Shown in pieces: positions 3,283 through 51,535 of a DNA stretch of 64,000 nt (positions are counted from its first letter, which is position 1; each line of letters opens with the position of its first letter). A program made the translations under genes and the position numbers. The stretch comes from Octopus bimaculoides (lineage: Eukaryota), in contig NC_068981.1 of NCBI RefSeq assembly GCF_001194135.2, forward strand, positions 107,335,878-107,399,877, given 5' to 3'. The notes under the pieces are model-generated. The model had not been told where the DNA came from and searched no databases. It worked only from the letters and a program-made list of their open reading frames with translations.

Positions 3283-4147
3283 TACATGAGATCTGATCAA
3301 TAAGTATCCAGACTGTTGCCATAGTAACAAAGCTAAAGCTGCTTAGCAAAGATTGACCTTAAACTCTGCTGAGCATGCGCACTAAGTTCTAATGTTCTAG
3401 CTCATTTCTATTCTTTACAGCAGTGCTTGGAATGAATGTGTGTAGTGTGTGATCATTGTATTGACCAGGACAGAGAAACTTGTCATGTTGATACCTGCTC
3501 AGAGGCCTGCGCAAAGTTGCAGAAAGTGTATGGAGAGGAGCCACACACAAGTGTATGAGTGGTTCAGACGTTTCCAAGTTGGTCAAAAAATGTTGATACT
3601 GATGAACCTTCTGAGAGGCCCGCAACCAGCAGAACTGAGAAAAACATCACAGATGTGCATGCAGCTGTGAGGGGAAATAATCAAATCACTATGTGTGAGT
3701 TATCAGAGGATGTGTAGATTAGCTATGGTTCAGTTCAGTCCATTATCACTGAAGATTTGGGTATGAGACACATGTCTGTCAAGTTTGTGTCAAAAATGCA
3801 TTCAGCTGACATGAAAGACACTTGGGTTTCAGTGGCATAAGATCTTGATTGCATCAAGAATGATGAAAACTTTTTGAAAATTTTACATAAGCCTCTGAGC
3901 AGGTATCACCAAGCTTTTGGCAAAATCTGATGCAGATTCTCTGGTCAACTTTCTGTCATGGTTAATGCAATGATGACACACTACACACCTTCCTTCTAAG
4001 CACTGCTGTAAACAGCAGAAGTGAGCAAGTACGTTAAAACTTAGTGTGCATGCATAGCAGAGTTCAAGGTCAAAGATCAATCTGTGCTATGTGCTTTAGC
4101 TTCATTATTATGGCGACAGTCTGGAAACTTATTGATCAGACCACGTG

Positions 4148-4632: not shown

Positions 4633-4689
4633 AGCTCCTAAGGTCCGATTATATACAGGCAGTGTAACAGTTGTTACCATGCCTAATCC
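4633..4689 (-). CDS. CACNA2D: alpha2delta exon (57 nt, phase 0-0): GLGMVTTVTLPVYNRTLGA
   Basis: Acceptor tttttcag, donor gtaagt; matches the LG.V.T.TLPV.N motif. Confidence 0.93.
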
Positions 4690-6866: not shown

Positions 6867-7083
6867 TTAGAATGGTGGTGCCTTCTGGTAGTATAAGTAG
6901 AAGTTAGAAAGCTGTTTGTAATTCTTATCCTTAATATCTTTCAGGAAGGCTGCACAGTTCTTTGCAAAGCCCAGCACTTTCTTTTGTGTTTGAGGGTCTT
7001 GGTAACTCCACATCCATTGTGCTTTTGTTTTTAAATCTCCATCTACTACTGTTAATGTTTTACTCCAAGTGCTAACATCAAAA
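6867..7083 (-). CDS. Candidate terminal coding exon D of unassigned intronic transcript (phase 2 start, 71 aa + TAA)
   Basis: Acceptor gttattttag; open frame FDVSTWSKTLTVVDGDLKTKAQWMWSYQDPQTQKKVLGFAKNCAAFLKDIKDKNYKQLSNFYLYYQKAPPF*. The frame is closed by an in-frame TGA about 4 codons upstream of the acceptor. GC-richer than its flanks; AATAAA on minus at 6628-6633 and 6276-6281 (weak evidence in AT-rich DNA). No homologue recognised. Confidence 0.55.
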
Positions 7084-9744
7084 CTAAAATAACTTCAATC
7101 AATTTTTTTATGTAATGATAAAATATTCTCTTATTACATTATTGCTTCAATGATTTCAAATCTTTTGTAAATTATTATAATCATTTGCCACAATGACAAT
7201 ATGATACTGCTGAAGTAACAATGATGGTGACGGTTATGAAAATGCTTGGAATAACAGTTTTATTCTGTCTTTATAAGTTAGCTTAAGTGTCTACATTTTT
7301 CAAAACAATTAAAAATGCAATAGATAAACTTAAATGCAGACTTTTAGAAACACCATAATACAAAATATATCTGAAATATAATTAAATATTTCCATAAAAG
7401 TCAGATATTTAAAACAGAAATAACAACTTACAATGGCTAAAAGAGATACAAATTACAGGGTGTATATTAGTTGTATAATTATATACAATCAAACTGTAAA
7501 ATATACAGAAAGGCAAATCAGCAATCAAAATTTACTAAAAGCTGCTACATCACAGAAAACATCAAATCAACAGTTATATTACATTTATTATTTATTAAAA
7601 CTCAATAATCTCACAACATATATTTAGTTTAAAGTAGGTTGTAAAGAAAAAGAGTTAAATAATGTTACTAGAATAAAATTCCAATAAAGAGTATTTACTT
7701 TTGTTGAGGTTAGGGTTACAGCAAAAAAAAAAAAAAAAGTAACTTCCAAAAATTCATAATTTTTTAAATTAAATATCCCTTACCTTTTCATATACGTAAA
7801 AAACTATTTTGAAAAATGTTATGGAAATGTATCCTATCAATTTCTAGTACATTGGCAAACAAACAAAGAATAATAATGATAATACAAGACAGAAACAAAA
7901 GATAAAATCAGAAACCTATTTTCAGGAAAATAGTATCTCAACACCTATTTCTTGGAAAATATGTTTTATATACTTCAAAAATTATCGTTAAAAATCATTA
8001 ATTTCCATAATACTAAAGTAATTTCTGCAGGAAGGTAATATGATAGATATTATTTTCTATGTAAGGTCAAAAATATAAGCAAGCACATACATACATACAT
8101 ACACAAACTCAGCCAACAAAAAAGCCATTACACAGTTACTCGACCTGCTCGAAACAACAGCCAAATGTACCTCAAATCGAACCCTGTCATCTTAGAAAAG
8201 GAACGACACTTCCTACAATGTAGTCTGAGATGTGCAAAAAGATGGGATGATCATGAATAGAACACTTTTGATTTTTAGATGTGTTAAATCAAAGCTAATT
8301 TATGATTATGTAAACACATGTAAATAATTAAATATTACACTTAAAGGTGGTGTTCCAGCATAGCCTTGGCTGTGATGGCTAAAACATACTAAAGAACTGC
8401 TCTTACACACACACACTGACAATTATACATACAAATATGGCTATAATAACCACCAGAATCACAAGTCACACCATCCAAGTTCTGGAATGATATTACATTA
8501 GTCAATTAACCTTTATTTCTGTTTTCTTTTACATATTTTTCTCATAAACAATAAGGTTTTCTTTTATTCATTATCATTAAATTGCAAGGTAAACTTGACA
8601 TATGAATAATCTCTTCCACAAATGAGTAGAATCTGATTGTTTTTGTGATGTTATGAATAATTTCTTCATGTGCCAATGAAATCAATAATTATCTTAAACA
8701 TTTTTTTCTGTTATGCTTTTTTTTTTCTGTTATGCTTCATTCAATGTTATATATTATGAAACAATATAATAACATGAGCTATTCTAATCATGATTATTTA
8801 GTGGGAAAGATCTGAAATGGTTTTGGAAACTAATACAATATCTAATGAACATACTACAATACATACTAAAATGAATTCATTTAAATTTTAGCACCAGACA
8901 GAATCACAGCATTGTTTGTAGAATGTTTAAAAAGAAGTATTCAAATAACCATTATTTCTATTTTTTCCTAATCTTTTTTACAGAGGATATAAGAGAAGTA
9001 AATGTTCACTAAAGTCTACTAAGAGTATGAGAAGCTTATTCACAATAGCAGCAGTTAATTTAAAGTATTTCTGGTTTCTAAAATGTAAAATATACCATGG
9101 AACTGAAGTAAATTTGTTTATATAATACAGATTAAGCAGAAAAAAATCTAATTCTAAAAAGGATTACTCAAAAAGGGGACATTGAGAAGGTGATAAATAA
9201 ATAATTTTGGTAGTTAAATACAAGTTCTAAGAACAGTACAAGAAATAAAGGGAAAATTAGATGATTGTTAATTAAAGTTGTTCACCAACCAAGAGAATGC
9301 TATTTTTATAATGTGATCTATAAAAATCTGGACTGAATTTCTGTCAAAAGTGAATGTAATGTTCTAGACGAGAAATTAGGTATATTTGGGATTATAGTCA
9401 GTCATTAAGTGCCTACAGCTAAAGTACCTGTTATTATTCCTTAATAAAGAAAAAGTTTCTTGGTACACCTTGGTTTTAGTTTGAGATGTACATTCTTGGA
9501 TTTGTATATGTAAATGAATATATATATATTTGAAATTTATAGAAAAACAAAAGACAAGGACAGGTGTATGAATAACAAGCAAGTGTATTAGTTTGATGCT
9601 CGGGAAAAATGAAGAAGTCTTTTATTTTTCGAGCCTGCACTTTTCAACAGAATGGAATAAGAGAATATAAACAGAGAGAGAATGAAAAAAACTTGTAGAT
9701 TTTAGAAGTCCAACATGGCGAATGTGTATATATATATATAAGCT

Positions 9745-12316
9745 GATAAGAAAATATTTGCCAATGTTCTACGCCATGAGGACCAAAGATTTGAGGTATT
9801 TTGTGTTGCAAGACAGTGTGTGAGAGAGAATCGTGATGTCATAGGAGAGAAATGTGTCCACATGGATGATGGTACACTTACACTAAACGAGGCTGCAAAG
9901 AGAGAAGTTTGGAGATGCCACTATGAAAGGTTGCTCAATAAAGAGAATGAATGGGAGAAAGAGAGTCTGCCGAAGGTCGACCCAACAGAGGGACCAGCTA
10001 TCCAAGTTGACAGTACCATGGTAGATAAAGCAATTAAGAGTATGAAGACAGGGAAACGCCCCGGCCCATCAGGAATCACTGCAGAGATGCTCAAAATATC
10101 TGGCAGTGTTGGCTATAGCTTAGTCACCTGTATTGTTAATCAGGTGATACACGAAGGAGTCATGCACAATGACTGATGTAGCAGCACCATAGTCAACTGC
10201 TACAAAGGTAAAGGTGATGCTTTAGATACAAATAATTACAGAGGTATCAAGTTGTTGGATCAGGTAAGGAAAGTCACGGAGAGGGTCATAGCCCAACTAA
10301 TTGGGGAGAGAGTAAGTATAGATGAGATGCAGTTTAGGTTCATGCCAGAGAAAAGCACCACTGATGCTATATTTCCAGTAAGACAGCTGCAGGAGAAATA
10401 CCTAGCCAAAGATAAATCTCTGTACCTGGCTTTCATTGACATGGAGAAGCCTTTGAAAGGCTCCCCCGATCCCTTATCTAGTGGTCAATGAGGAAACTAG
10501 AGATAGAAGAATGGTTAGTGAGAGTTGTGCAAGCCATGTACAGAGACGCTGTGAGTAAGGTGAGGGTTGGCAATGAGTACAGTGAAGAATTTCGGGTAGA
10601 GGTAGGGGTCCACCAAGGTTCAGTCCTCAGCCCCCTCCTATTTATCATAGTCCTCCAGGCAATAGCACAGGAATTCAAGAGCTCTTCTATGCTGTTGACC
10701 TTGCTTTAATTGCTGAGTCACTATCAGAACTAGAGGAGAAGTTTCAGGTTTGGAAGCAGGGACTAGAATTGAAGGGCCTTAGAGTCAACTTAGCTAAAAC
10801 CAAAGTCCTAATAAGTAGGAAGGTAGACAAAACACAAACCCCTTCAGGTAGATGGCCCTGCTCAATCTGTAGAAAAGGCGTAGGTAGAAACTCTATAAGA
10901 TGCACCCAGTGTAAGCTATGGACACATAAGATGTGCAGCAATATCAAAGGAAGGCTAACTAGGAAGTTAGTTTTTGTATGTGGCAGATGTTCAGGAGCAA
11001 TAAACACTGAAAATGTGCAGAAAACAACTTCTGCCACATTCCAGGGAGAAAAACTACAAGTAGTTGATAGCTTCCATTATCTAGGTAACCAAGTTAGTAG
11101 TGGGGGAAGGTGCACTGAAAGTGTAGCTGCTAGAATAAGAATAGCCTGAGCAAAGTTCAGAGAACTCTTACCTCTGCTGGTAACAAAGGGCCTCTTGTTC
11201 AGAGTAAAAGGCAGACTGAATGACGCATGTGTACGAACAGCCATGCTACATGGCAGTGAAACATGGGCCGTGACTGCTGAGGACATGCGTAAGCTCGCAA
11301 AGAACGATGCCAGTATGCTCCGATGGAAGTGTAATGTCAGTGTGCATACTCGACAGTGTAAGTACCTTGAGAGAAAAGTTGGACCTAAGAAGAATCAGTT
11401 GTGGTGTGCAAGAGAGACGATTGCACTGGTATGGTCATGTGGTGAGAATGGATGAGGATAGCTGTGTGAAAAAGTGCCACACCCTAGCAGTTGAGGGAAC
11501 CTGTGGAAGAGGCAGGCCCAGGAAGACCTGGGATGAGGTGGTGAAGCACGACCTTCGAACATTAGGCCTCACTAAGGCAATGACTTATGACCGAGTTCTT
11601 TGGAAATATGCTGTGCGTGGGAAGACCTGGCAAGTCAAGTGAGACCATAATCCGAGGCCTCTGGCAAGGGTGTAGCCAGCCCACTTATGCATACCTTTCC
11701 TTCATTGGACACTAAATTCTGCTTGCAAAGCCTGTTGGGGTGAGTGAGGTCGAAATCAAACCATATTCAACGACTGGCCTCCATGCCAACCTTCCTTCAT
11801 TGGATACTAAACTTGGCTTGCAAAGACCTGTTGGGGCAAGTGAATTCGAAATCGTGTTGACACCTGTACCAGTGGAGTGCTAAGAGCACCACCTGAGCGT
11901 AATCATTGCCAGAGCAGCTATCTGGCTTCCATGCCAGTGGCACGTTAATAGCACCATTTGAGCGTTATCGTTACCAGCGTCACCTTACTGGCACTTGTGC
12001 TGGTGACACGTGAAAAACATTCAAGCAAGATCGTTGCCAGTGCCGCTGGACTGGCTCCTGTGCAGGTGGCACATAAAATACACCATTTTGAGTGTGGCTG
12101 TTGCCAGTACCGCCTGACTGGCCTTCATGCCGGTGGCACATAAAAGCTCCCACTACACTCTCGCAGTGGTTGGTATTAGGAAGGGCATCCAGCTGTAGAA
12201 ACTCTGCCAGACCAGATTGGAGCCTGGTGCAGCCGCTGCCTCTCCAGACCTCAGTCAAACCGTCCAATCCATGCCAGCATGGAAAACAGACGTTAATCGA
12301 TGATGATGATGATGAT
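9745..12316 (+). mobile_element. 5'-truncated, frameshifted RTE-clade LINE
   Basis: RT fragments (K.PGPSGITAEMLK; NYRGIKLL; STTDAIF..RQLQEKY; GVHQGSVLSPLLFIIVL; YAVD in place of YADD), a Cys-rich finger, DSF.YLG, RL.WYGHV.RM and GRGRPRKTW. The 3' UTR ends in a (GAT)n tail; the element sits next to (TA)n. Confidence 0.93.
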
Positions 12317-13478
12317 AATATACACTCATCCATATAATAGTTTATGTGGAAATTGAATTAAAATTAGAAAGTAATGGATCCATATAATTTATTCCAATTT
12401 TTTAAATTTTCAAGTAACTGGACTAACTATGTACATAATTCCTCATCTCTTAAATATTGGACTAACTATTCAATGAATTCTAGTGTGGCTGAGTACTCCA
12501 CTTACACTAACATCCTTAACATAATCCTTCAGTAGAATTTACTTGACACAGTGTGTAAAAATACTGTAAAATTACTTGTACTGTCTATCTACCAAATTTC
12601 TACAAAATATCCATCAACCTACAAGGCTTGAAAGTAAATGAAATCAGAAAGCTCTGAAAAGCAAGAAGTTTTAATTCTATCATTGAAAATATTCCTAACG
12701 GTGCTAATACTTCATATGCAATATGATATTGATGAAAACATGATTATCTGATAGGTTTGTTGAGATTTAATACTGCAAGATAGTCTAATTTGAGAATGTG
12801 CTTTCTTGCCATGTGTACAGAGAATAATTTTAAAATTTAGTGGAAGCAGGAATCTAGTTGAATAATTATCATGAGGATAAAAATGGGAGTATTCCAATGT
12901 CTGTTTATTAAGGTGAAATTTTCAAGTTAAAACTTTGTATGCTTATAAAATAGCTAAAAATCTTAATGAAACTCAACATCCTGTTGCAATTGGATTTGTT
13001 AGAGTATTTAATATTTTAGACATTAGACGACATTATTGATGCACAAGAAATATAACTTGGGAATTATTAAGGTTTTTAAATACTGTAACATCTAACTGTA
13101 AAAAAATGAATTCCCAATATAATTCCATGTGACCATATCACATTGAGCTACTAGATAGAAATGTTAAAAATTGGCAATACCATTTCTTTTTGCTGTTAAA
13201 AATTATAACAAACACACACTCATCCATCCATGCATATACACCAACATAATATTCATATATGTAGATACATGCGTATGCTTACATTACACATATATATATA
13301 AAACAACTTTACAATTATTAAAACATACTCAGAAATTGTACAACCAAAAGCAGATGAATGCCACAAAAAATATCACAAAACTAATGACTTGATCAAACAG
13401 AAAAATCTATTCTTAAATGTGTAATATACATATATATATGTATATTATTTTTGTTGGTAGTTAATTTATAATATATTG

Positions 13479-13539
<61 letters not shown>

Positions 13540-16500
13540 TATATACACATATATATATACACATATACATATATTTATATACACAAATATATACATACAC
13601 ACACACACTTACACCATAAATAATTTAAAATATAGTTCCAACAAAACAGCATATCCCAGGAAAATATTCTGTATAAATAGTAAATATTTCAATAGTAAAA
13701 ATCAGCAAGACATGCAAGACACAGAATTGATAGCACATGTTGGTTTTAACACACACAAGCCATGCAACTACATGTCCCAAAACCAACAAAGGCTTAGAAT
13801 ATATCTGCGACATAACACAACAGCAGCCTAAAATTTCTCTCCTCAGTTTGACCTACATGAAAACGTAAAGCAAAACACAAATGTAATGAAATTGTTGCAA
13901 CATCAATTTTCCCTCCAAATCTCAACCTTGGACAGCAGCACAGATTTCTTTGAATAAAACACACCAAACCAAAACTTTCAAATGCTAGCCATATATGTCA
14001 AGTACATTTCTGGCAATCACTTGATCTACCAAGAGAATCCAATGCAAAATGTAGGATAGATGTTAAATGAGATGCAACATGCTGTCACATTCCAAATAGC
14101 TAATTAAAAGATGAAAAAATCTACAGCCAGCATGAAAACAAACGTCCTTTTGAATCTGCATGTCACTAAAACATTTTTGACCAAGTTTTTTAATAGAGCT
14201 ACTTAACAACAACAAATCTCAATTAAGTTCAAACTTAAAAGTTTTCAAGCTTCATTGTTATATGTTTCTGTTGGTCACACAATGTTATATTGGTTCATAA
14301 ACTAACTAATATACTTATTCTGGTGAAGGTGGTTGTCACACAATAGATACATACTTAGAAAAACTGTAGAAATACACAAATATGCCATCAACAAAAAAAC
14401 ATGTCCTCATAGGGCCTCTTGATACAAATTGTACAACTAGAGACTAAAAATAATGCACTGAGACTGGTCTAGTTAGTTAAACTAACCACATCACTGCACA
14501 CACAATTTAAAACAAGAATGAGAATTTATATTGGTTATACTTATGTGAATACTAATGATGAACAAAACCTCAACCTTGAGAATAATACTGGCAACTTGAA
14601 AACAGAGTGTTGTGACTCTGAAATATTGACATATAAATATTGTAGTCCTAGCAACAGGCTTTTCATTTGTTTATCACCATTTATAAATTTAAACATAAAA
14701 ATGGACAAATAAAAACAAATGTACAAAACATCTAAAAAGTTGATTTGCAGGTACTGATAAATCATGATCTACAACTGTAAAAGATAGGCCTTCAATGACT
14801 GATTCATGAATTCACCATAAAACAATATAAGATCAAGACATGGAAGTTTGTGGTATAGGAAACTGACAGAGGTAACTCCTTTTAATTTTCAAATCAATAA
14901 AGTAAAGTATTAGCAGTGTAATAGCAAAAGGATCAAATTTACAGAATCTAGGAACCTTTTGTTCATTAGCAAAACAGCCAAAACTTCATTATATTTGTAT
15001 GTAAAAACATTTTATCATGATATCTATCCATAAAAATTTATTACAGTAGCTATGAATAAACATACAAACAGGTATGTTATATTTAAAAAATTATTACGAT
15101 GTAGTTTAGTGTGTATTTCATCTTTTGATATTTTTACTTGAGTTTTGATAGTAAAAATTCTAAATATACATGGAAGTTAAAATATACTAAACTTAAACCG
15201 TATACTCAATTCAATACGCTTAAACTAAAAGCTTGGCACACATATTGTATCTGTATGTCTCAGCATGCATGTGTAAATATTTATATGATGATGTAAAATT
15301 CTTCTTCATTTTAGCTAAGTTTAGTAACAAAGACTCAAAAAAGTAGCAGAGACACTATAATGTAGGAAATAATTAGTTATATATAAAGATTATCACAGCT
15401 AGAAAGAGGTATAAATTCTGGGTTATATGGAAAAAAAAATATATTAAAAATTAGCAGGATTGTTTATTGAAAAGTTTGTAGACACAGAATCAAATTTGAA
15501 ATAAATAAATACAGAAATAATAAGTAGCATCTCATGGTGTGCATTTAATTTTTTCTTGATTATATAGTTGTAGTCTACAGTATAAAATAGTTACAGTTAC
15601 TGTTTTAAATTCTCAAAATAAGGGCAATAATAAAACAATAGTGAAGTGGTAGTAATCATACAGCACCAGACTATATGCCTTAAAGTATTGTTCCACTCCT
15701 CAACATTCTGTGTTCAAATCCTATAAAGGTGAATTTTTTAAATAATCCTTCTGTCTGATTAACATAGTACCAGTGATGTCAAGATGATTTCATCAAACTA
15801 AACTCCTTTTCCACAAGTTTATCATACTGTTTCCATATAAGAAATCAATATTAGATCAATGAAATAATAACTATTTCTATTGTTGAAGGTTTCTCATTTT
15901 TATGATCTGTTTGTTAAATGTTTTGAATAGTTTTGATGCAAAGCTAAAAACAAATAAATATAAAATTACATCTGTTAATTTGCATATCATTTTCTATTCA
16001 AACAATATTTCAGATAATGGAAAATATGGCAGATTGATGGGAAAACAGAAGAATATGTTCATGTGTAAACATGTTTTGATCAATAAAAGGATGCAGAATT
16101 TGATTCACACATTTCAGTTGTTTGTTGTAGATATCTAAATAGATTGTCTAGTGTGGACTGAGGATTATCAAATAAATATTTTACTTAAAATCATACTGGT
16201 GCTGCAGCACTGGCAATAATAGTCATTAAAAAAATAATATATATAGGTAAAAGTTTCTCACACGTGTACATGCACACACACACACACACACGCACACACA
16301 CGCACACACACACACACACACGCACACACACACACACACACACATACAGCTTTGTGGAGCTTTTTTTCCCCAAATAATTTGAAAGTTTTGTTGTAGTGTT
16401 TTAAATGAAAAAATTACAATTCCACTATAATTTTTCTTATCAGTCTACATTTCTGCAGCACCCAGTTACAAATACTCAGCACACTAGAAATGGATAATCT

Positions 16501-19500: not shown

Positions 19501-19982
19501 GAGAAATGTTGTTGCTGATGATAAAAGAGTCTTTATATGCAAGTTTAAACCATTGTATTGTAGCAAAAATCTTGAGAAAGGATAAAGGGAATAAGATATT
19601 TGAGAAGTGGAATTTGAGCTGAAAAGTTTTGGAATTTAAAACTCAAGTGTTAGGAATATATAATAAAGAAGTTGTTATCAAATTTGTGCTGCTGGGCTGG
19701 TTGTACAGAATAACCAGAAAAGATTACAAAAGGAGAGAGCATATCAAACAACTTAAGACTTATGTATGTGGTTTAGGGACAACAGGCAAAATACTAAAAA
19801 CAGGCCAAGCTGGAGAAAAATGTAATCTAACCACTTGTAATACCTTTCAAATCAATTATTCATCTTATTTTAAGCGTCTATTTCTATATAAATATGTGAG
19901 AGAGAGAATAGAACAAATCTACTTTAGCAGTCTTGTAATGTTTTCATTAATGTACCCAGTCTTATTATTTATATACGTATAC

Positions 19983-20020
<38 letters not shown>

Positions 20021-23000
20021 CAAGTTACAGTAAACAGCACACTGACTCTCAAGAATATGGATGCTAGGTTGTTGGTCAAGCAATTTTAACTGTATAAAAG
20101 CAGGTAGTTGCCTAAACAGCATACTTGCAAATGAAGTATAAATACCATTTTGTCAGAATAGATGTTCACCCACTCACTGTGTTTGGCATTGTTTAGCACC
20201 AATGGTCGACTGAGAACAGGAAGATATTCCTTTGAACAAATCAAGGTTTTCAAGTTAGCCAAATCAAAGGATTACATTGTAAAATATCCAATGGGATACT
20301 AAAAATGGAATTTACATTAATGTCTTTCTAAAAAAGGAACGGAAAGTGTATCTTAATAAAAAGAAAATAAAGAAACAATTATGTTAGTTCTGGATAGAAA
20401 CAGGATGCAAGAGTGAGTTTATATATAGACTAGCTATTTGAAAAAGTATAAAAAGAAGAAAAAAAACTACGAATAAAATCAAGAATAGTCTTTCTTATGA
20501 TGTCAGTCAGGTCCATTTAATATCTGTGTATAGTAAAAAAGAGTGTAGAGTAATAGAATTGTCTACATGAGAAATTAACACTGAAACACGAGTGCCTAGT
20601 AAATTATGTGAAATTTATGGACATTTGGAAGCTTATGATAATGATAGAATATGCAACAGAAATCAGCTAACTTGCTGAGAGATAACAGATGCTTAAATTC
20701 GTTCCTTACTATATGTATCCTCAAGACTGAGATAAAAAAAAATATATATAAAGCATTTGGTATGAAAATAGTACTCCATTATCATAAATCTATAAATTGA
20801 AAGAGGCTGTCCAAAACTTCAAAAATTTAGGCTTGTGAATTCAGTATATTCTAACAAACACATAATATAGCAAAACAAGTTTTAGTATTATGTTAGACTC
20901 TAACAATTTTTAAAGTTGATCTTGAAAGTATTGTTTTAGAAGTATGAAAGATGTGCTGAATACTATTGCACAACCATAACTAGAACTGGAAACAAGAATT
21001 TTATACAAAAAGTCATCAATATAAATGTTTATTTTTGTTTAGATGAGGTGAAGAAAAGCATGAACATTAATGTAGTGAAGAGAACATTAAGCTATTTATA
21101 AATTAAAATTTTGGAAAATTTTCCCAAGGTTTTAATGATTCTCAATTAGTTTTAGATTTTATTGAAACTGCTTCCTTTCAGATTTAAAACAGACTACATA
21201 TTCACAATTTTCACCAAACAGAAAAATAACATATACTCAAAGGGATAAACCAGACAGTTGATATATTTCTGACAGTATTGGAAACTATTTCATACACTCG
21301 TCATGATATAAGAAAATGCTTCAGAGTTATGACTTGGTAGTTTCTATGTGTAGAAAAGAACAAATACTGTTTTTGATGAAAATGTGATTGTGCTTTTCCT
21401 TGCAAAAAACACAAAAACAAATATTAATGGACTTAATCAGTAATGCAATCAATGAGTTGATTAAAAAGCAGTTAGAAAATGAGAAAGCTGATGTTGTAAT
21501 GGCAAAAACCCTTTCCCAAGATAATAAAACACAGATAAGAGACATCTGTTATGTAAGGGGAGTGATCAATACATAGTGGCATAGTAAGTGCCAAGATTGA
21601 TTGGGAGATGCTCAAAAGAAAATATTTTGATATTTATAGGATTTTCTCTTCACAAAAAAGGTATAAAAGAAGCAATAAATATAGATGATCAACAAAGTCT
21701 AGAAAGAAGAGCCAATATGATTAGATATATCTATAATATAAATAAAAAAGGATAGACTGTTTAGATAAGCTATAAAAACAACTAGCAATTATGAAGATCA
21801 GATGTTTTCTGCAAGAGAGAGATAACTTCAATCACATAGACATTCAGGAAACATGTATAAGAGTTGAAGTGAACACAATTTGTGGATCAAATGATCAGTG
21901 GTTATCAAATAGAAATACTGTAAAGCTCAATATAAAAACTCACAGCAAAGTTGTTTAGGTTAAGACATGATAACAAACAACTATCTGAAGAGAGCTGATG
22001 ATTCTATAACACAGAATATGGATACAAAAATTTTGATTGATACAATCATTAAAAACAGAATATTGCAGCAGATTCAGTACTCTGTTACTCTCTCTCTCAC
22101 ACACACACATACACACAATACAATACACACACAATACAATATATATATATCTTAATATATAAAAATATATATGAAGTAAATAATGATTGTAAAGCAGTTT
22201 TAGAAGCTTATCATCAAACTTTACCAAATTGCAGACTACTTCCCATCACTGGAATTGGACACATGTTGGCGAGTCATCATCATTTAATATCCACTTATCC
22301 ATGCTGATACATCATAATATTACAGTATATACAGACAGAAAATTCTGCAAATTTGCAAAGTTGATGGAAAACTTCCTAAATTGTTCAATAGCCCCATCCA
22401 CCTTACACACTATAGGTGTAGTTTAATATTCAATTTAAAAAAAAAATCAATACACTTTTGAGATATCCAACAATTTATCATTTCAAAATGTAAAACATTT
22501 TATGTGATATTTTAAATTCCAAAAGCCATAAATGTTACAAAATTGCAAATTAACCTACCAGCATTACAGGAATAACTGGTCATGTAACAGGACTTTTTGA
22601 CTACTTGAACAAATATATTAGAAAGTAGAATAGGGATTTAGAATATATTTAAAATCATGTAAGCACATACCTATACACACACTGAATTCAGTTATATGTG
22701 CAGGTTAAGTTTTATGAGACTGACAATCCTAGCATTAATTCTTTTAATTCTCTTTTGAAAGGGTCTGGCAACAATTTCTTTTCTAAATTATAATCTAAAA
22801 CATTTTTAAAAAAACCTTTTAAAGAATTAACATTGCTTTTAAACATTCCCTTATATCTCACAAATCAAATAATCATTGAGCACTTTTCTCTCCTTCTTAT
22901 TAAGTTATGAGATACATTTTGCAATTGTTTAATTGTATTTAAAGCTTCAATGTGTGGTACAGTGGCAAAATTGGTTGAGAGTTGAGCAAAATACTTTCTA

Positions 23001-24276
23001 GTATTTAGTTATGTCACTTTATGCATTGGTTTTCAATTATTTTTTAGTGAGTTGATTTTCATACAAACCATTGAAATGAAACTGGAACAGAAGTTAGGCA
23101 GCTCGCCTAAATGCACAATACACTGGCATGAATAGCATTTGAATCAAATTTAGATGCGCATTAACCTTGCAATTATTTTACATATTATATAAGAGATTGG
23201 AATTTAGAAATAAAATATCAAATTTCATAGTTATGTTTGTTTTTGAAGATTTCATTTGAAATTTAAACAATTATAACTAATTTTCATTAAATAATTATTT
23301 GCTCAAACTAAATTTTGCAGTAAATTTTGATGGTTTGGGATTTAACTGCAATTGTCAAGTTAATCTGCAATAGATATACTACACAATAGCTTCTACTGTA
23401 AATAGTTAAATATATTATCAAACATATATATCATATAAATTGAGCATTTCTAACAGTCTTTTAATGAAAAGTATGTTAAAATTATTGTTGCATAAATTTT
23501 AAAAGTATTTAGAAAAAATTTTTGTATAGTTGACAAAACTGAAAAAAAATTGTATAATAGGCTATATTTTCAAATAAAAGAGTAAAAAAATATGCATTTT
23601 AAATTTATACATATTGTTATAGATCTTTTCATAAATTTCAAATTATTCACTCACAGTACAGTCAAATGAACATTACTTCTAATGTAGAAACATGTAGATC
23701 TATCATGTAAATCTATGATTAGTTGTCTATTAGAGTTGAATACATGGCTAAATTTTCATTTGTTTAGCAAAGTAAATACAAATGACTTCATACCTTTAGA
23801 TTTTTGTTCTAAAAATATAATGCCTCAATGTATGTTACAACAGTCTTCTCTTCTTGGTTACTAATCTGCTTTAAATTAATCCATCAGAAGGAACCAGATA
23901 TAAGCCTAAGGTCAGCTGAAACATGGTACAAACAAATTAAAGGAACAATGATGCTATGTTTAAAGAAAATAACTTACATTAATATTCATCAGAATGTTTC
24001 AGATCTAATACAGTTATAAATAATCATAAAGATATACATTCATATTTCTTTCCATTTCATTTTTAAAAAAACATTGCAGCATTAGATGCTTCCAGAAAAA
24101 ATTTTTTAGATGTATGATAAAAACCTTTTGAAGCACAGTGGATTTAACCTCATGATAGAAACAAATCAAAGAATTATAAACCTATTCTTAATATTGGTAA
24201 AGTCATTTTCATTATGAAGTTTTGTTTACTGAAGAAAATAAGTGGATATTAAAGGATATTATGACATCTGGTTTAC

Positions 24277-24327
24277 TGGCAATAAGACTGTAATCCTGTC
24301 CTGTTCTCTATGAAATTTGGAATATAC
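24277..24327 (-). CDS. Candidate exon C of unassigned intronic transcript (51 nt, phase 2-2): YIPNFIENRTGLQSYC
   Basis: Acceptor tttgtctacag, donor gtaaac; open and phase-compatible with 25813-25908 upstream and 6867-7083 downstream. Confidence 0.5.
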
Positions 24328-24847
24328 CTGTAGACAAATATATATAATTACTCTTCAGTGATATCTAGTATAACTACTAGTGTATACTAATGTATTAATG
24401 TAGTATAACTACTAGTGTATACTAATGTATTATTGTAGTCCCAGTGACGGGACTAAGCAGTTGCTCAAACAATCACTAAAGCCAACTCAAATCGTTAAGA
24501 GGCTTCTACGTAGACACAGAAGCCACTAAGGGAGCATGTACATTGTTTCTTCATCTGTTAGAGTTAGCAACAAAATCTTCCTCAAAATTCAATTAGTAAA
24601 AATTTTAAAAATTTAATTATGTGTTGCTAAGAGGACAAGCAATTTGATTTCATAATCTATAAATTACAGAAATAGCTCCAATAAAGTACAAAGTTCTAGT
24701 GGTATTCAAATTAATACTAGGAGTATATTTCATACCACACAGGTTTTACAAGCTAGAAGAAATAGATATTTTCACTATATGGGTAGAAATAAAAAAGAAT
24801 AATAATAAAAAAAAACATCAGAATTGTGATAACTATGATTTATATAG

Positions 24848-25037
24848 GAGGTGCCGGTGGCACGTAAAAGCACCCACTACACTCTTGGAGTGGTTGGCAT
24901 TAGGAAGGGCATCCAGCTGTAGAAACTCTGCCAGATCAGATTGGAGCCTGGTGCAGCCTTCTGGCTTGCCAGTCCTCAGTCAAATCGTCCAACCCATGCT
25001 AGCATGGAAAGCGGACGTTAAACGATGATGATGATGA
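24848..25037 (+). mobile_element. RTE 3'-UTR/tail fragment with (GAT)n (others: ~1080-1270 +, ~32130-32260 -, ~46275-46455 -)
   Basis: ggaagggcatccagctgtagaaactctgcc...catgctagcatggaaagcggacgttaaacgatgatgatg, the same sequence as the 3' end of the LINE at 12150-12316. Confidence 0.85.
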
Positions 25038-25812
25038 CAACATTTGTAAATGTTTTATTTGTATGATGTTAAGTAAAGATCATAAAAAAATATTTAGTAT
25101 GAAACTAATGGTCACCATTATCTAAAAAATATATGACCAACATCATTTTGCTAAGCAAGTAACTAAGATAATCATGTTAAATGCAGATGTGAAATAAATA
25201 TACAAAAAGCTATCAATCAAGAAGATTATCATAATATATTTGCTATTGGGCTGATTACTGATAAAAAAATATTTGATTTAAAAACTAGATTGTACTATAA
25301 GGAATGGAAAAAAATTTTAGCCTAATACCTCTAAAACAAACTTAAGGCATTTTTCCATGTGTTATCAATTTAAATTTATTTTCCAGTTAATACATCTCTT
25401 TCGACTGAAGTTTTACCAGAATGTAAATATACTTCTTTTTTATGTCTTGAATCCCAAAATAATGATTTTGTTCAGAAAAAAATACATGACAGCAGAGATC
25501 CCTGTTTTGTTACCAAAAGGAAAACCTTTCTTTCACCCATTATGAATACAATATAAAATTCAAAGGCTAGAAATGTACTCTCAAGAACCATACAAATTGT
25601 TCATAATCATCAGTTGTTAAAAGCTCAAAATGAATATGACACACTCTCCACATAATATATGCAATTATTAATATTACTAACTGTATAAATGAATTTCTTC
25701 ATTCACAATGAACATAAAACTGTCAATTGTGAAGCTATTATATATTGTTAGAAACTTATACTAATAACAAACCACTTATTCTTTAGTATATTTAACCTTC
25801 AGATTTTCATAC

Positions 25813-25908
25813 CTAATCTCTTCCACAGCAACATTTAGTTGCAATTCAGTGACAGACTTCACAAGGTGAGCCAAGTGTTGGCACACAGAACCTCTCAAAA
25901 ATCTGGTC
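25813..25908 (-). CDS. Candidate exon B of unassigned intronic transcript (96 nt, phase 2-2): TRFLRGSVCQHLAHLVKSVTELQLNVAVEEI(R)
   Basis: Acceptor aagtttcag, strong donor AG|gtatga; open and GC-richer than flanks. Confidence 0.5.
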
Positions 25909-27025
25909 CTGAAACTTTCTGATGGCTTTATTCTTCACTAAAATAGTTCATTATGAATATGGAACAAATGGTTCTACAACTGAGCTGGGTGGGACAAAAA
26001 TTCAAATTGCATCCTATCAATTATATTTTGTACCTGTGTTACAACCAACCTCTTACCATTTTTATTACTTAATTAAAAAAAAAAATTAATAATATCATTT
26101 TGTTTTGTTTTAATAACAAATGACAAAGATGTTCCTATATCAATCCAATCCAATTTAAATGTGCTAAGAATATAAGAAAACATGGGGTACAGACACTTAA
26201 TTATTCTATGCATATAATTTAATTTATTATTTTCCGATGTACATTAAAAGTCAGGAGTTTAATATATATTAATTGTAAATTAAAATTTCCTAAAACATTT
26301 TAATAGAAATATTATCATTAATGGATCACTAACCAGATTTAAGTATTATCATACAATATTGAATATAGTGTTTTGTACAGGAGTGAATTGCCCAAATGAG
26401 CACAATTTTGTAATAAAAATGTAATTTTAGTTTTAGCAAAAGAACTAATGCCTTTTTAAGGAACAAAATAAAGACAGCAAAGTTTATAATTCTAAGTTTT
26501 TGGTAATCACCTTACCAACTATATCTTTTGTTGCTTTATGGTTTACTATAAAGAAAATTTAAATGAAAACAACAAGTGGTAATGTAATATGTGACAGGTG
26601 CGTTATTAAGAGAAAGTTTATTTTATAAAATATTGCTTTATTAAGAATACTGCTTTGTTTATATACATATGTATATACATATATTTATTTATTTTATTGA
26701 CCATATACACTCAATGTACATGTTTTGTTTGTTCACTGGTTTTCTGAAGTATAGCACTTGAGGGATGACTCTCTCATCCCTAGTTCAATTCAGGCATGTG
26801 ATATTGATAAGCCACAAAAATGGTGAAATACCATCACTCCTGAATTCGATCGGAGGCAAGTTGTCTCACCTGTCTATGACTTCCAGGAGTTTTAATAACA
26901 ATGAGGAAGTCCTCCCCTAAGCACTATAGCGCACCGAAATGGCAAACAAACAAAACACATACATGGAGCATAGGCAGTCAATAATAATTTTCTCAACACT
27001 AACACTGTTTTCAATTTGTCATTGA

Positions 27026-27067
<42 letters not shown>

Positions 27068-29325
27068 CAGTTGATATTGAAAACTGGCATCCATCAGAAA
27101 TTAACTAATTGAAGTCAATACTTGATGGTTAAAATATTAAGGCTGTATTTACTTTTGCTTTAACTAATAAAAGAAGCCAGTTTAAAATATCTTAATCTCA
27201 AAAGTTTATACAAGAAACAGGAACTCATTGTAGTCAAGAGACCAAAAGAGAACTTCTATGTGACATTCAAGAGATATTGTCTTCAAATCAATCCTTTCCA
27301 TCTCAAAAGAAATCATATAGTCCTAATTTCCTCTCTAAACTGATGGTAGATGGTTAATGCTTGGAACATTTTTGAAAAATACTGTTTATCAGAACCAAAC
27401 AGGGGTTAAACAATGACAACATAAATATATCAACAAAAAGGATATATTATTGTTGAAGATCCTGTACAGAAGACATTTGACATATAGGAAAATATGCTAA
27501 TTCACATTTCCACATTTTCTCATATTTCCAATGCACTATTCAAAAAATATCTAAATATGATTTCTTATGTTGTGAATTATTACAGTGGTAGAGGATAAAA
27601 AATGGCTATTTCTTTCATTCAAGTTTATCTTACTGTTTTTAAGGAAAAGAAAATCATTCTAGAAATCAATTTGAAGACTCAGTTACCAAGAACTATCAAC
27701 CGAGTCATGGTGTTCATAACAATGCAATTTAAAACAAAAACAATTTGTGTTTATAATTTATTAATCAACATGAATTAAGTAGGGAAAAATTCTAACATGA
27801 AATTATCATTCTTTTATGCACAATGCATATTTTAGAAAAACAAATTTGCAAGGAATAATTTGATGTATTATATATTTTATTTAGTTTTAGTAAGAGCCAT
27901 TCTACTTTGTCTGCACCTTATATCATAACTCATGCCCAAGCAATAGAGGTAGAGTGGTTGGAACTATGCAAACACTAAATTTTTTAACAACATGCCAATT
28001 GTCATAACAATAATGTAGATTAATAGAAAAAGTAAACAACAAAGCATTAAGATATCTAAAACCATGATCAATTTAGGCTTTATCTAAAGACAGCATATCT
28101 ATTCTTCACTTATTGAAAAAATAAAAGTTCTATTAATTATTAAAGAAAAAGAGATTATTTATTTTAATATTACTGAAGGCTCTCAAAATTGGTATATGGT
28201 GAAATCTTCCTTGAAATAAATTTTCATGAGAGAGAGAGAGAAAGAGAGAGAGAAGCCTCACTGAGAAAAGACTTAGATTAGCAAGTATGATAAAACAATG
28301 GACATCTTAAGAACAATGCTTTTATACATAGATAAACAGAAATTTTAGATCAAAAATTCAAAAGTCAACATTCACCTAATTATAAGAAAATGTCATGAAC
28401 ATGTAAAGGGAAATTTTCTATCCAAGCCTTTAAATTCCTTTATTTTAATTTATTTGGCTGTGTTAACAGTTTTAACTACTCTCAAAACATTTTAAATGCA
28501 ACTGCTTCATGTGCTTCATGTTTGCAATGGATAAAAAAAAAAAAAAGTAAATGTTCATCTAGGAAAATAGCATATCTATCTATAATGTAATGGGAAAATG
28601 ATAGATAACAAAGTCCCTGAAACCTCAAAACAACACAGTACTTTGGATGTAATAATGCTATTTTGTAAAATAGAACATTTTTTAAAAAGCAACCCCTCTT
28701 TAATATTTCATCAACATTTGTTTAGCTTGCCAAACAATGTTCAATCAAATGTAATTGATTAATGTATAAGGCATCCCATTTATTCAGCTATTGTAAATTA
28801 CTAGTATTTGAGTTTTATATTGTTATAATATCTTCATATAAATTATCTGTCAAAAAAATTCACAGAAAACCTTTGATATCTGACAAAAGGCTCCATAACT
28901 AAACAACAATTCTATTGATTGAGTAAATTCCAATGTTCTCATTATTATTATTATATACAACTTATTTCTTATACACAAACTGTTTAGCAATAAGATTTTA
29001 GAAGTCCAAATGACAAGCCATTAAACAGGATTTTTCTAGCTCTAATTATTTAATAGATTTTAAAATTTTATTAATATTTTTTTTTTTTTTAATAGAGAAT
29101 TCCAGTTATGCATTCTGTTTATTCTTTATATTAACAAAAGTATCCAGTATATGGACTATTAGCAACAGCTACCAAACTACTCATTTGTTTTAGAGATAGT
29201 TTTGATGATCAACTAGTCAATTATTTTAATTCTACTTTTAGATAGTTTCAAAGTAAGACAAATATTCAGTGCATGAGTAAGCTGAACTGTGAAGTAGAAG
29301 TATTTGATCAGAAGTCAAAACATAC

Positions 29326-29339
29326 AGTAAGTCTAGATA
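29326..29339 (-). CDS. Candidate 14-nt microexon (phase 0-2): YLDL(L)
   Basis: Acceptor gaatttctttgcag and donor gtatgt; supplies exactly the phase change needed to join 30506-30583 to 25813-25908. It could be a chance match. Confidence 0.3.
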
Positions 29340-30505
29340 CTGCAAAGAAATTCATCTGGATGTGCTACCATTCCTGCTAATTAGTCTAATCATGAAGTAA
29401 AGTAGTGTGGTCAGGTAATACTACAGCACACACCTTAAAAGTTAAAATGAGTGCTTTTATAAAATTATCCTCCAGACCCTTTGCTTTTCTTCCTACATTC
29501 TAAATATGCAACAAAATTCTTGAAAATTCACAATGATTATGAAGTTAATTTTTGTTTTAGCTGAAGAACTATAAGCTTGTGCCTCTTCCTTGTATTGTGC
29601 CCTGGGGAAAACAATGTAAAATTAATTCTATATTATATATGACAATTTAATGCTGGCATCTGATTTTTACGTTGGGGCCAGTTTGAATCAGAATATTTTA
29701 AAAGTTGATCATGATACTTTTTGAAATGATAAAAGGAGGAAACAATGATAAATAGAAAATATAGGGATATTAATTTTTGAAAATATACATATACTTGCTT
29801 TTAGTTACAGAGAAGCCACTAAATTATGATAACTATTACCACCACCAAAAATGATCACACCCAGTCAAATATGCACAATTTCATATTTGAATAATAATCC
29901 TGAAAGCAATTCCACCATGCCATTATCATTTTATAAATCAATTAGAATAATCATCTTTATTTTCTAGCAAACCAAACAAAGAATACAACTAACATATAGT
30001 AAGGGAGTATATGTTCATTTTTCTCAAATAATGAATAAATGTATACAATTAACAATCTCAGATTTAATGGTGAACAATATCTTCATATAAATATACATCA
30101 ATATGTATACACAGGTAATTTTATTTGAGTTTAAATCTCAGCTAAATTTTTTTTCCTTTCATTTGTTTGTCAAAAAGTAAAACTGATATATATTTACATT
30201 CAAAATAATTTATCTGAAATATTTTTTTATTTTTATATATTTGAGAAAAGTTTACATCATCAGAGCCTCCTATAGTAGTGTATTCCCAGTTTTGTGATAT
30301 ATATGAAAGAAACAGTATTTACTATAACATTTCTAAAGAAGTTAATGATTCTTATAGAGAGAAGACATGCCAATGTTGTTTTTAGCAGAAGATAATGAAA
30401 AAGAAACCATTAACATTTCTTTAAAAGAAAACAGTGGGTATTTGCAGCAGTAGAAGCAACCCTAAACTTATAAATTTTGTCAGCTATATAAGTATTAAGT
30501 GTTAC

Positions 30506-30583
30506 CGAACGGTCTAATCCAAGAGACCAATGAAAGTAGTAAGATGCTGTTCCTGGAGGACCACCCATATGTTTCAAAAACTC
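30506..30583 (-). CDS. Candidate exon A (78 nt, phase 0-0): EFLKHMGGPPGTASYYFHWSLGLDRS
   Basis: Acceptor tattacctacag, donor TCG|gtaaca; open, GC-rich island in AT-rich intron. Belongs either to the intronic transcript or to alpha2delta as an alternative exon. Confidence 0.55.
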
Positions 30584-39580: not shown

Positions 39581-39664
39581 ATGGCTATCCTGGTACACCC
39601 CAGCCCACTTGATGTATTCAGAATGATTAAGGGCCAAAGGTCGAGCTAGAACTCCTATATAGTG
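39581..39664 (-). CDS. CACNA2D: alpha2delta exon (84 nt, phase 0-0): HYIGVLARPLALNHSEYIKWAGVYQDSH
   Basis: Acceptor tttattccag, donor gtaagc; matches Y..VL.RP......W..VY.D. Confidence 0.92.
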
Positions 39665-42902: not shown

Positions 42903-42952
42903 TTGAACTTTGGATCGTATAGCACCCATGGCTGGAATCTGTGAAAAATAAC
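42903..42952 (-). CDS. CACNA2D: alpha2delta exon (50 nt, phase 1-0): (G)YFSQIPAMGAIRSKVQ
   Basis: Acceptor tttttcag, donor gtaagt; end of the VWA domain. Confidence 0.92.
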
Positions 42953-51445: not shown

Positions 51446-51535
51446 CACTTCAAATTGTTCAAATGCAAATTTAAACCCTTCCTTGAAATTTGCCATATCA
51501 TGGGCTGTGAGATTTTCTACAGCTTTTGTGAGAAT
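51446..51535 (-). CDS. CACNA2D: alpha2delta exon (90 nt, phase 0-0): ILTKAVENLTAHDMANFKEGFKFAFEQFEV
   Basis: Acceptor ttttactag, donor gtatga; GF.FAFEQ motif. Confidence 0.92.

What the first reader, a model, noticed from the sequence alone, without database searches (positions are those of the whole stretch)
6867..30583. Hidden multi-exon, same-strand coding unit inside the 35-kb alpha2delta intron
Seen: the alpha2delta exons 39581-39664 (..YQDSH) and 4633-4689 (GLGMV..) join directly in frame. Yet the intron between them holds four GC-richer, AG/GT-bounded, stop-free segments on the same strand. A (30506-30583), B (25813-25908), C (24277-24327) and terminal D (6867-7083, ending in TAA) chain in frame if a 14-nt microexon (29326-29339) is used. 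The product reads EFLKHMGGPPGTASYYFHWSLGLDRS-YLDLL-TRFLRGSVCQHLAHLVKSVTELQLNVAVEEIR-YIPNFIENRTGLQSYCH-(possibly further exons)-FDVSTWSK...YYQKAPPF*. B, C and D are barely represented in the ORF track. I recognise no family. Inference: either a nested co-directional gene (uncommon; nested genes are mostly antisense) or an alternative 3' end that fuses the alpha2delta N-terminus/VWA to a new C-terminus. The latter would lack the delta peptide and GPI anchor, giving a potentially secreted decoy isoform.
Basis: partly seen in the sequence, partly recalled or inferred. Interest (0 to 1): 0.8.

Follow-up and report, generated by a model that had tools for sequence, protein, structure and literature searches.

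The report
One known alternative exon, three chance ORFs
Of the claimed hidden exons in this octopus calcium-channel alpha2delta gene, one (A) is a real, already annotated alternative exon of the gene itself, and the other segments look like chance open reading frames, so no hidden gene is supported.

Summary
The window is the Octopus bimaculoides alpha2delta-2 gene, on the minus strand. All five segments exist as described and chain in frame, but the chain is a construct.

**Segment A (30506-30583)** is real. It is the exon that RefSeq isoform X3 (XP_052825062.1) uses between exon 9 (42903-42952) and exon 11 (4633-4689). It is the middle member of a three-exon, one-at-a-time cluster:
- E10a, 39581-39664
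- A, also called E10c, 30506-30583

The window CDS built with each choice, or with none, is an exact substring of isoforms X1, X3, X2 and X6 respectively.

**The microexon, B, C and D** have no support.
- They are absent from 25 cephalopod alpha2delta proteins.
- No nested gene is called in the 204-kb gene range.
- No homologues were found.
- 92 other mini-exons would restore the frame equally well.
- D's ORF is one of 21 of similar length on that strand.
- B and D have poor acceptor sites.
- A C-to-D splice would skip the real exon E10b.

Cuttlefish RNA-seq contigs from four runs read through the A-type exon's donor and stop 18 codons later. That would give a VWA-only alpha2delta, or it may simply be intron retention.

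Verdict: ordinary and already annotated.

The parts
42903..42952 (-). alpha2delta exon 9 (..GYFSQIPAMGAIRSKVQ). It ends in phase 0 and is the donor used by all exon-10 alternatives.
   Evidence: Spliced mapping of cephalopod proteins; exact match to RefSeq isoforms.
39581..39664 (-). Exon 10a (HYIGVLARPLALNHSEYIKWAGVYQDSH), 84 nt, phase 0-0. Used in O. bimaculoides isoforms X1 and X5.
   Evidence: Exon-10 profile HMM E=4.4e-13. 28/28 residues identical in cuttlefish.
30506..30583 (-). Segment A, here called exon 10c (EFLKHMGGPPGTASYYFHWSLGLDRS), 78 nt, phase 0-0. Used in RefSeq isoform X3 (XP_052825062.1) and in a 2015 gene model, spliced exon 9 to A to exon 11.
   Evidence: exact substring of X3. 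The cuttlefish orthologous exon EFLQHLGRPKELESEYWSLGLDRS aligns to window 30584-30502 at E=3e-10.
20146..20229 (-). Exon 10b (EYLPVLSRPLVLNNAKHSEWVNIYSDKM), 84 nt, phase 0-0. Used in isoforms X2 and X4.
   Evidence: (E=4.9e-14). Used in cuttlefish RNA-seq contig L001.
4633..4689 (-). alpha2delta exon 11 (GLGMVTTVTLPVYNRTLGA), the common acceptor for all exon-10 alternatives.
29326..29339 (-). Claimed 14-nt microexon. No support.
   Evidence: One of 92 equally valid frame-restoring AG..GT mini-exons between A and B. Absent from all isoforms.
25813..25908 (-). Claimed segment B. It is a GC island with one open frame, a purine-rich (poor) acceptor tract and a good donor. Not in any annotated product. 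Nature unexplained.
   Evidence: (acceptor score -3.6).
24277..24327 (-). Claimed segment C. 51 nt, open in two of three frames, little GC contrast, and the claimed frame scores worst for codon periodicity. No support.
6867..7083 (-). Claimed terminal segment D. It lies in a 75-codon stop-to-stop ORF (6870-7094). It has a poor acceptor and no homologue, and the structure model is low-confidence. Most likely a chance ORF.
   Evidence: (acceptor score -3.2).

Best explanation
**Shown.** The window carries the Octopus bimaculoides alpha2delta-2 gene on the minus strand. Each is 78-84 nt and phase 0-0. Annotated isoforms use exactly one of them, or in one isoform none.

**Inferred.** The exon encodes the 26-28 residues between the end of the VWA domain and the start of the first Cache domain. 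Choosing a, b or c therefore swaps that linker without changing the rest of the protein.

**Remaining segments.** The 14-nt microexon, B, C and D are not part of any product. They are most likely chance stop-free stretches with chance AG/GT edges in an AT-rich intron that offers thousands of such candidates. There is no nested gene.
For: - **A is annotated.** The window CDS built with E10a, E10b, A or no exon 10 is an exact substring of RefSeq isoforms X1, X2, X3 and X6 respectively (isoform list).
- **A is conserved as coding sequence in cuttlefish.** There are 13 identical, 3 synonymous and 8 non-synonymous codons plus a 6-nt indel. The last 8 codons and the GTAA of the donor differ at one base. 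Similarity stops 4 nt past the donor.
- **E10a and E10b are clear paralogues.** An exon-10 profile scores them at E=4e-13 and 5e-14 against 2812 window ORFs. Cuttlefish RNA-seq contigs use either a or b.
- **The a-c-b order is seen elsewhere.** It recurs in an Elysia gene model, and all three exon types occur across gastropods and bivalves.
- **Position in the protein.** Exon 10 is residues 449-476 of X1. The Pfam VWA match ends at 438 and the dCache_1 match starts at 480.
- **Against B-D.**
  - Absent from 25 cephalopod alpha2delta proteins.
  - The only other gene called within the alpha2delta range plus or minus 10 kb in GCA_001194135.2 is glutathione synthetase, beyond the 3' end.
  - No Pfam, PDB or database homologues.
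  - The chance nulls.
  - Acceptor scores of -3.6 (B) and -3.2 (D), against -1.7 to 8.6 for the 12 real exons scored, 10 of which score above 1.
  - AlphaFold mean pLDDT of 56 for D.
Against: - Profile HMMs do not link A significantly to exon types a/b (2.4 bits) or to mollusc type c (-0.6 bits). Its place in the cluster therefore rests on position, phase, length and usage, not on demonstrable sequence homology.
- B is a sharp GC island with one open frame and a good donor, and it sits at the 76th percentile of decoys for codon periodicity. That is unexplained.
- The periodicity test misclassified the real exon A, so it cannot exclude B or D.
- I had no RNA-seq reads and no second cephalopod genome for this intron. 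An unannotated rare transcript cannot be ruled out.
- The protein searches see only cluster representatives. The list in the word-indexed search also appeared to stop at about 1.75 times the query length, which is my inference.
Confidence: 0.88

Rival explanations
1. B, C and D, with or without A, form a real but unannotated alternative 3' end of alpha2delta. This would give a truncated protein with a new C-terminus that lacks the Cache domains, delta and the GPI anchor.
For: - B to C to D are phase-compatible without any helper exon.
- B is a GC island with one open frame and a TAG|GTATGA donor.
- D ends in a stop, with AATAAA 233 nt downstream.
- Truncated alpha2delta products are annotated elsewhere, for example 601-aa human CACNA2D4 isoforms.
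Against: - None of the six RefSeq isoforms, the 2015 gene models or 19 other cephalopod proteins holds them.
- There are no homologues.
- C and D were picked from thousands of candidates.
- AATAAA occurs 1.26 times per kb in this intron, so a signal downstream of D is expected by chance.
- B and D have purine-rich, poor acceptor tracts.
- A C-to-D splice must skip exon 10b.
- After exon 10a or A, both phase 0, B would be read in the frame that hits TGA after 20 codons, not in the claimed frame.
Confidence: 0.05
2. A to D are exons of an independent protein-coding gene nested in the alpha2delta intron on the same strand.
For: The only support is the in-frame chain itself.
Against: - A is spliced to alpha2delta exons 9 and 11 in isoform X3.
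- No nested gene is called in the locus.
- No start-codon exon was found. The sequence upstream of A up to exon 10a is LINE, mariner-like and microsatellite debris.
- The nested gene's last intron would have to contain the host exon 10b.
Confidence: 0.02
3. The A-type exon also serves as a composite terminal exon. Read-through of its weak donor and cleavage in the downstream intron would give a secreted alpha2delta of about 440-480 aa that holds only VWA_N and VWA. This is seen in cuttlefish and may also occur in octopus.
For: - Contigs assembled from four cuttlefish RNA-seq runs (L002-L005) are fully spliced up to the A-type exon. They then run at least 289 nt (586-689 nt in three of the four) into the intron, with a stop after 18 codons and AATAAA or ATTAAA signals 335-592 nt after the stop.
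- The same product appears as model CAE1276745.1.
- None of the seven full-length (1060-1065 aa) cuttlefish-like Logan proteins in the P0131 cluster uses the A-type exon.
- The donors are weak: GTAACA in octopus and GTAATT in cuttlefish.
- An oyster-like transcript (P0011) and a Solemya model (P0006) also stop just after a type-c exon.
Against: - No poly(A) tail is visible in the contigs.
- The read-through peptides are not conserved: VILVAAVN.. in cuttlefish against VTLNTYIA.. in octopus.
- Models that stop after type a exons occur too (Lingula, Candidula, one JGI protein), which points to generic intron retention or prediction artefacts at these long introns.
- In octopus, A is annotated as spliced on to exon 11.
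Confidence: 0.2
4. B, and the other GC islands between A and exon 10b, are functional non-coding elements of the exon cluster. They could be a poison exon or RNA elements that steer the choice among a, c and b.
For: - Five GC islands lie at 24.4-30.6 kb. Three of them are closed in every minus-strand frame.
- If B were spliced after exon 10a or A, it would introduce a stop.
Against: - I found no significant complementarity between these islands and other parts of the window.
- There are no Rfam matches.
- No conservation data are available.
Confidence: 0.1

Closest known systems
Clusters of mutually exclusive, tandemly duplicated exons in ion-channel genes, for example exons 8/8a and 21/22 of CaV1.2 and 37a/37b of CaV2.2 (PMC5748662, PMC5059693, PMC3916075)
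   Same: Tandem alternative exons of nearly equal length and the same phase, in one interval between two constitutive exons. Each annotated full-length isoform uses one of them. Exons a and b are clear paralogues.
   Different: - This cluster is in the auxiliary alpha2delta subunit, not the pore subunit.
- It has three members spread over 19.5 kb.
- The middle member (A) has diverged beyond detectable similarity.
- All members are multiples of 3 nt, so the reading frame does not enforce exclusivity.
- One isoform (X6) skips all three, and some mollusc gene models hold two or three in tandem.
RefSeq annotation of O. bimaculoides voltage-dependent calcium channel subunit alpha-2/delta-2, isoforms X1-X6 (XP_052825055, -56, -62, -63, -64, -65)
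   Same: The window's exons, A included, reproduce these products exactly.
   Different: Nothing differs for A. The annotation holds no product with B, C, D or the microexon.
Nested genes in vertebrate alpha2delta introns (LRTM1 in CACNA2D3, LRTM2 in CACNA2D4). This is recalled from memory, not tested here.
   Same: They show that alpha2delta introns can host other genes.
   Different: No nested gene is called in the octopus locus, and the claimed peptide has no homologue or Pfam domain.

Membership tests
Mutually exclusive exon cluster (tandem exon duplication) | Alternative exons lie in tandem between the same two flanking exons. | tested here: met
   E10a 39581-39664, A 30506-30583 and E10b 20146-20229 all lie between exon 9 (42903-42952) and exon 11 (4633-4689) on the minus strand.
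Mutually exclusive exon cluster (tandem exon duplication) | The exons have the same phase and near-equal length. | tested here: met
   Lengths are 84, 78 and 84 nt, all phase 0-0, with AG/GT borders.
Mutually exclusive exon cluster (tandem exon duplication) | Sequence homology among the alternative exons: a versus b. | tested here: met
   An exon-10 profile of 37 alpha2delta homologues hits E10b at 4.9e-14 and E10a at 4.4e-13 among 2812 window ORFs.
Mutually exclusive exon cluster (tandem exon duplication) | Sequence homology among the alternative exons: A versus a/b, or versus mollusc type c. | tested here: not met
   Octopus A scores 2.4 bits (E=22) against the a/b profile and -0.6 bits against a type-c profile. 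The cuttlefish exon scores 1.2 and 0.4 bits. Only weak motif resemblance remains: E-[FY]-L at the start, and W...D-[RP]-x at the end.
Mutually exclusive exon cluster (tandem exon duplication) | Mature products hold exactly one member. | tested here: inconclusive
   - O. bimaculoides isoforms X1-X5 hold one member each, but X6 holds none.
- Cuttlefish RNA-seq contigs hold a, b or c singly.
- Several mollusc gene models hold two or three in tandem, which may be annotation errors.
- No read-level data were available.
Nested protein-coding gene | The gene has its own first exon with a start codon, and a transcript independent of the host. | tested here: not met
   A is spliced to host exons 9 and 11. 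No candidate first exon was found: the sequence upstream of A is transposon and microsatellite debris. No nested gene is called in GCA_001194135.2.
Nested protein-coding gene | The product is recognisable as a protein, by homologues, a domain or a confident fold. | tested here: not met
   - Pfam: 0 hits. PDB sequences: 0 hits.
- 5.8 billion protein clusters: 0 hits.
- 1.84 billion representatives: only spurious hits to repeat proteins.
- AlphaFold mean pLDDT of 56 for D.
Alternative last exon / truncated isoform built from B-C-D | Transcripts or annotated products join an upstream alpha2delta exon to the new exons. | tested here: not met
   No 8-residue word of B, C or D (nor the microexon's 5 residues) occurs in any of the 25 cephalopod alpha2delta proteins, RefSeq X1-X6 included. 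RNA-seq reads could not be examined.
Alternative last exon / truncated isoform built from B-C-D | The reading frame is conserved in related species. | not testable with these tools
   No cephalopod genomic sequence for this intron could be fetched. The gene ranges are too long, or the product is not on record.

The most novel reading that the evidence does not exclude
In cephalopods, and perhaps in molluscs generally, the type-c version of alpha2delta exon 10 (segment A) doubles as a composite terminal exon. When its weak donor is not used, the transcript ends in the downstream intron. It then encodes a secreted protein of about 440-480 aa that holds VWA_N and VWA but lacks the Cache domains, the delta peptide and the GPI anchor. 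Such a protein could act as a decoy or as a ligand-binding fragment. In this reading the exon-10 choice would control protein architecture as well as linker sequence.
Probability: 0.2. Interest if true: 0.5.

Novelty: already known. Interest (0 to 1): 0.15.

Why it matters
As submitted, the finding would have meant either a rare co-directional nested gene or a new decoy isoform of a calcium-channel subunit. The evidence shows neither.

The one real element is an alternative exon that RefSeq already annotates. The practical lessons are modest:
- In this AT-rich genome, GC islands with splice-like edges are a fair cue for exons. A and the missed E10b both qualify.
- Chaining such islands in frame carries no weight, because thousands of candidates exist.
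- Alpha2delta genes of molluscs carry a three-way alternative exon at the VWA/Cache junction. Three searches of the paper library found no description of it. It may deserve functional study, because the VWA domain is the part of alpha2delta known to contact the channel's pore-forming subunit (stated from general knowledge, not tested here).

Tried and rejected
- **A as a third exon-10 paralogue by profile HMM.** Not significant. The link was established later through annotation and position instead.
- **Codon-position periodicity model.** It was trained on 14 real exons. The true frame scored best in 13 of 14, and decoy ORFs did so 57% of the time. A, C and D looked like decoys and B was borderline. 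Because it misclassified the real exon A, I treat it as weak evidence.
- **Crude splice-site matrices**. Several real exons also score low, so I use them only as a relative guide.
- **Self-BLAST of the segments.** All are unique in the window, so none is an in-window repeat.
- **Similarity of A-D to alpha2delta proteins.** None.
- **Rfam and tRNA scans.** Nothing.
- **Inverted repeats and complementarity among GC islands**, as possible selector elements. Only LINE copies and microsatellites turned up.
- **AlphaFold on D.** Low confidence, and no decoy was run for calibration.
- **Mapping the odd C-terminal tail of O. sinensis XP_036357014 to the window.** No match.
- **The first homology search.** It returned nothing even though proteins holding A exist. 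Only cluster representatives are searched, so its silence on B-D is weaker evidence than it looks.
Full report
**1. The observation**

All five segments are present on the minus strand at the stated coordinates. Each has AG before it and GT after it (D ends in TAA). The direct in-frame join of 39581-39664 to 4633-4689 is also correct.

A and B are sharp GC islands: 0.44 against flanks of 0.23-0.28. That is similar to true exons in this window, which run 0.42-0.46. C and D show much less contrast.

**2. The gene**

A tblastn search with a human CACNA2D1 sequence (written from memory, so used only as a probe), followed by cephalopod proteins, mapped 13 alpha2delta exons on the minus strand from about 58.95 kb to 0.23 kb.

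The same search revealed a second copy of the 84-nt exon 39581-39664. It lies at 20146-20229 and reads EYLPVLSRPLVLNNAKHSEWVNIYSDKM. It has the same length and the same phase, with AG/GT borders.

A profile of this exon built from 37 alpha2delta homologues was scored against 2812 six-frame ORFs of the window. It hit the two copies at E=4.9e-14 and 4.4e-13.

**3. What A is**

The first searches with the 151-aa chain found nothing: no Pfam or PDB-sequence hit and no hit in 5.8 billion protein clusters. That silence was misleading, because only cluster representatives are searched.

Listing the members of the cephalopod alpha2delta clusters and reading them gave the answer.
- O. bimaculoides RefSeq isoform X3 (XP_052825062.1) reads ..AIRSKVQ|EFLKHMGGPPGTASYYFHWSLGLDRS|GLGMVTTV... 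This is exon 9, then A, then exon 11.
- Isoforms X1 and X5 use exon 10a.
- Isoforms X2 and X4 use exon 10b.
- Isoform X6 uses none of the three.

The window CDS assembled with each choice is an exact substring of X1, X2, X3 and X6. This also identifies the window as O. bimaculoides.

A is therefore an annotated alternative exon of alpha2delta itself. It is the middle member of a three-exon cluster in the order a, c (=A), b.

**4. Conservation of A**

Cuttlefish (Acanthosepion pharaonis model CAE1276745.1, plus four Logan RNA-seq contigs) has an orthologous exon, EFLQHLGRPKELESEYWSLGLDRS, placed directly after exon 9.
- The codon alignment shows 13 identical, 3 synonymous and 8 non-synonymous codons, plus a frame-preserving 6-nt indel.
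- The last eight codons and the GTAA of the donor differ at a single base.
- Nucleotide similarity to the window covers 30584-30502 only (E=3e-10). It stops 4 nt past the donor.

**5. The cluster in other molluscs**

In 56 aligned alpha2delta proteins, gastropods and bivalves show three exon types at this position:
- type a: xYxxVxARPLAL...
- type b: EYxPVLSRPxxL...WGNIYxD...
- type c: fast-evolving, ending in DPR or DPH

Some gene models hold two types in tandem. One Elysia model holds all three in the order a-c-b, which is the genomic order in the octopus. An annelid model holds a and b in tandem.

Profile HMMs do not link cephalopod A to type c or to types a/b with any significance. That assignment therefore rests on position, order, phase, length and weak end motifs.

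Exon 10 encodes residues 449-476 of X1. It lies between the end of the Pfam VWA match (residue 438) and the start of the dCache_1 match (residue 480).

Three literature searches found mutually exclusive exons described for CaV alpha1 subunits, but none for alpha2delta.

**6. The microexon, B, C and D**

No 8-residue word of B, C or D, nor the microexon's five residues, occurs in any of the 25 cephalopod alpha2delta proteins. That set includes all six O. bimaculoides isoforms and the 2015 gene models.

In the chromosome-level assembly GCA_001194135.2, the alpha2delta gene spans 204 kb. The only other gene called within that range plus or minus 10 kb is glutathione synthetase, beyond the 3' end. 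No nested gene is annotated.

D's 75-aa ORF was scored by HMMER against 1.84 billion representative proteins. It gave six weak hits, and the three I read (P0121, P0123, P0125) were multi-copy matches in tandem-repeat proteins. An AlphaFold model of D has mean pLDDT 56, with a single helix.

The chance expectations are as follows:
- 5755 AG..GT stop-free segments of 45-300 nt on the minus strand, and 6615 on the plus strand.
- 92 alternative mini-exons of 59 nt or less that would restore the A-to-B frame.
- 21 ORFs of 70 codons or more on the minus strand outside the transposon zones, against a Markov-1 null of 4.7.
- AATAAA occurs 1.26 times per kb, so a signal downstream of D is expected.

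Structural points also count against the chain:
- The acceptor tracts of B and D are purine-rich, scoring -3.6 and -3.2. The 12 real exons scored range from -1.7 to 8.6, and 10 of them score above 1.
- A C-to-D splice would skip the real exon 10b.
- After exon 10a or A, both phase 0, B would be read in a frame that reaches TGA after 20 codons, not in the claimed frame.

A codon-periodicity model placed A, C and D among the decoys and B at the 76th decoy percentile. Because it misjudged the real exon A, I give it little weight.

B remains an unexplained GC island.

**7. The truncated-isoform idea**

Contigs from four cuttlefish RNA-seq runs (L002-L005) are fully spliced from the N-terminus to the A-type exon.
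- They then read through its donor (GTAATT) and stop after 18 codons.
- They continue 289-689 nt into the intron, at least 586 nt in three of the four.
- They pass AATAAA or ATTAAA signals, but show no poly(A) tail.

The product has 439-477 aa and holds only the VWA_N and VWA domains. No cuttlefish-like full-length protein in the cluster uses the A-type exon.

Similar read-through ends occur after type a exons in other phyla, and the read-through peptides are not conserved between cuttlefish and octopus. Plain intron retention in assemblies is therefore at least as likely as a real isoform. I put the real-isoform reading at about 0.2.

**8. Surroundings**

The GC-richer stretches inside the interval are transposon debris.
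- Reverse-transcriptase fragments lie at about 9.7-11.6 kb (plus strand) and 33.6-34.4 kb (minus strand). They form a long inverted repeat.
- A mariner-like DDE fragment lies at 35606-35941 on the minus strand. I identified it by eye, and Pfam gave no hit.

No RNA family or tRNA was found in the window.

**9. Verdict**

One of the claimed segments is a genuine exon, but it is already annotated and belongs to the host gene's three-way alternative exon cluster. The other segments are best explained as chance. The novelty class is 'already known', and interest is low.

Noticed in passing
window 20146-20229 (-), with 39581-39664 (-) and 30506-30583 (-): Alpha2delta exon 10 exists in three alternative versions (a, c, b) spread over 19.5 kb. 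The same three types, in the same order, occur in gastropods and bivalves, and types a and b occur in an annelid model. Three searches of the paper library found no description of this.
   Followed up: yes
L002-L005 (cuttlefish Logan RNA-seq contigs); window 30413-30505 (-) for the octopus equivalent: Cuttlefish transcripts read through the donor of the A-type exon and stop 18 codons later, which would give a VWA-only alpha2delta. In octopus the same read-through would add 31 residues (VTLNTYIADKIYKFRVASTAANTHCFLLKKC) before a stop, with AATAAA 274 nt past the donor.
   Followed up: partly
window 24427-24561, 26790-26919, 27890-27975: Three sharp GC islands (0.42-0.46 against flanks of about 0.22-0.28) lie between A and exon 10b. 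They are closed in every minus-strand frame, unique in the window, and match no Rfam family. Their nature is unknown.
   Followed up: partly
window 9742-11639 (+) and 33587-34426 (-): Two decayed copies of a non-LTR retrotransposon (RVT_1 fragments, one followed by a PHD finger) sit in opposite orientation inside the interval. They form inverted repeats of up to 292 nt at 76-78% complementarity, about 23 kb apart in the pre-mRNA.
   Followed up: partly
window 57675-58079 (+), 35606-35941 (-), 3446-3714 (+): Mariner/Mos1-like transposase fragments. The first has a Pfam HTH_48 match (E=1e-5). The other two were recognised by eye only.
   Followed up: partly
window ~48.80-48.95 kb and ~50.02-50.70 kb: Runs of N (assembly gaps) lie inside the intron between the exons at 51446-51535 and 47241-47369, flanked by microsatellites and a LINE fragment.
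   Followed up: no
P0127 (O. sinensis XP_036357014.1), not in the window: The O. sinensis RefSeq model ends after exon 10a with a 106-aa tail whose ...TPHGNSDH... stretch recalls, from memory, a LINE endonuclease motif. The rest of the gene is a separate model (XP_036357085.1), so the gene is probably split or mis-modelled. The tail does not map to this window.
   Followed up: partly
window 40815-40988 (-), 24663-25025 (+), 12092-12334 (+), 46274-46441 (+): A short element recurs that translates as ..EWLALGRASSCRNSA.xDWSLV.. It is probably a SINE-like repeat scattered through the introns.
   Followed up: no
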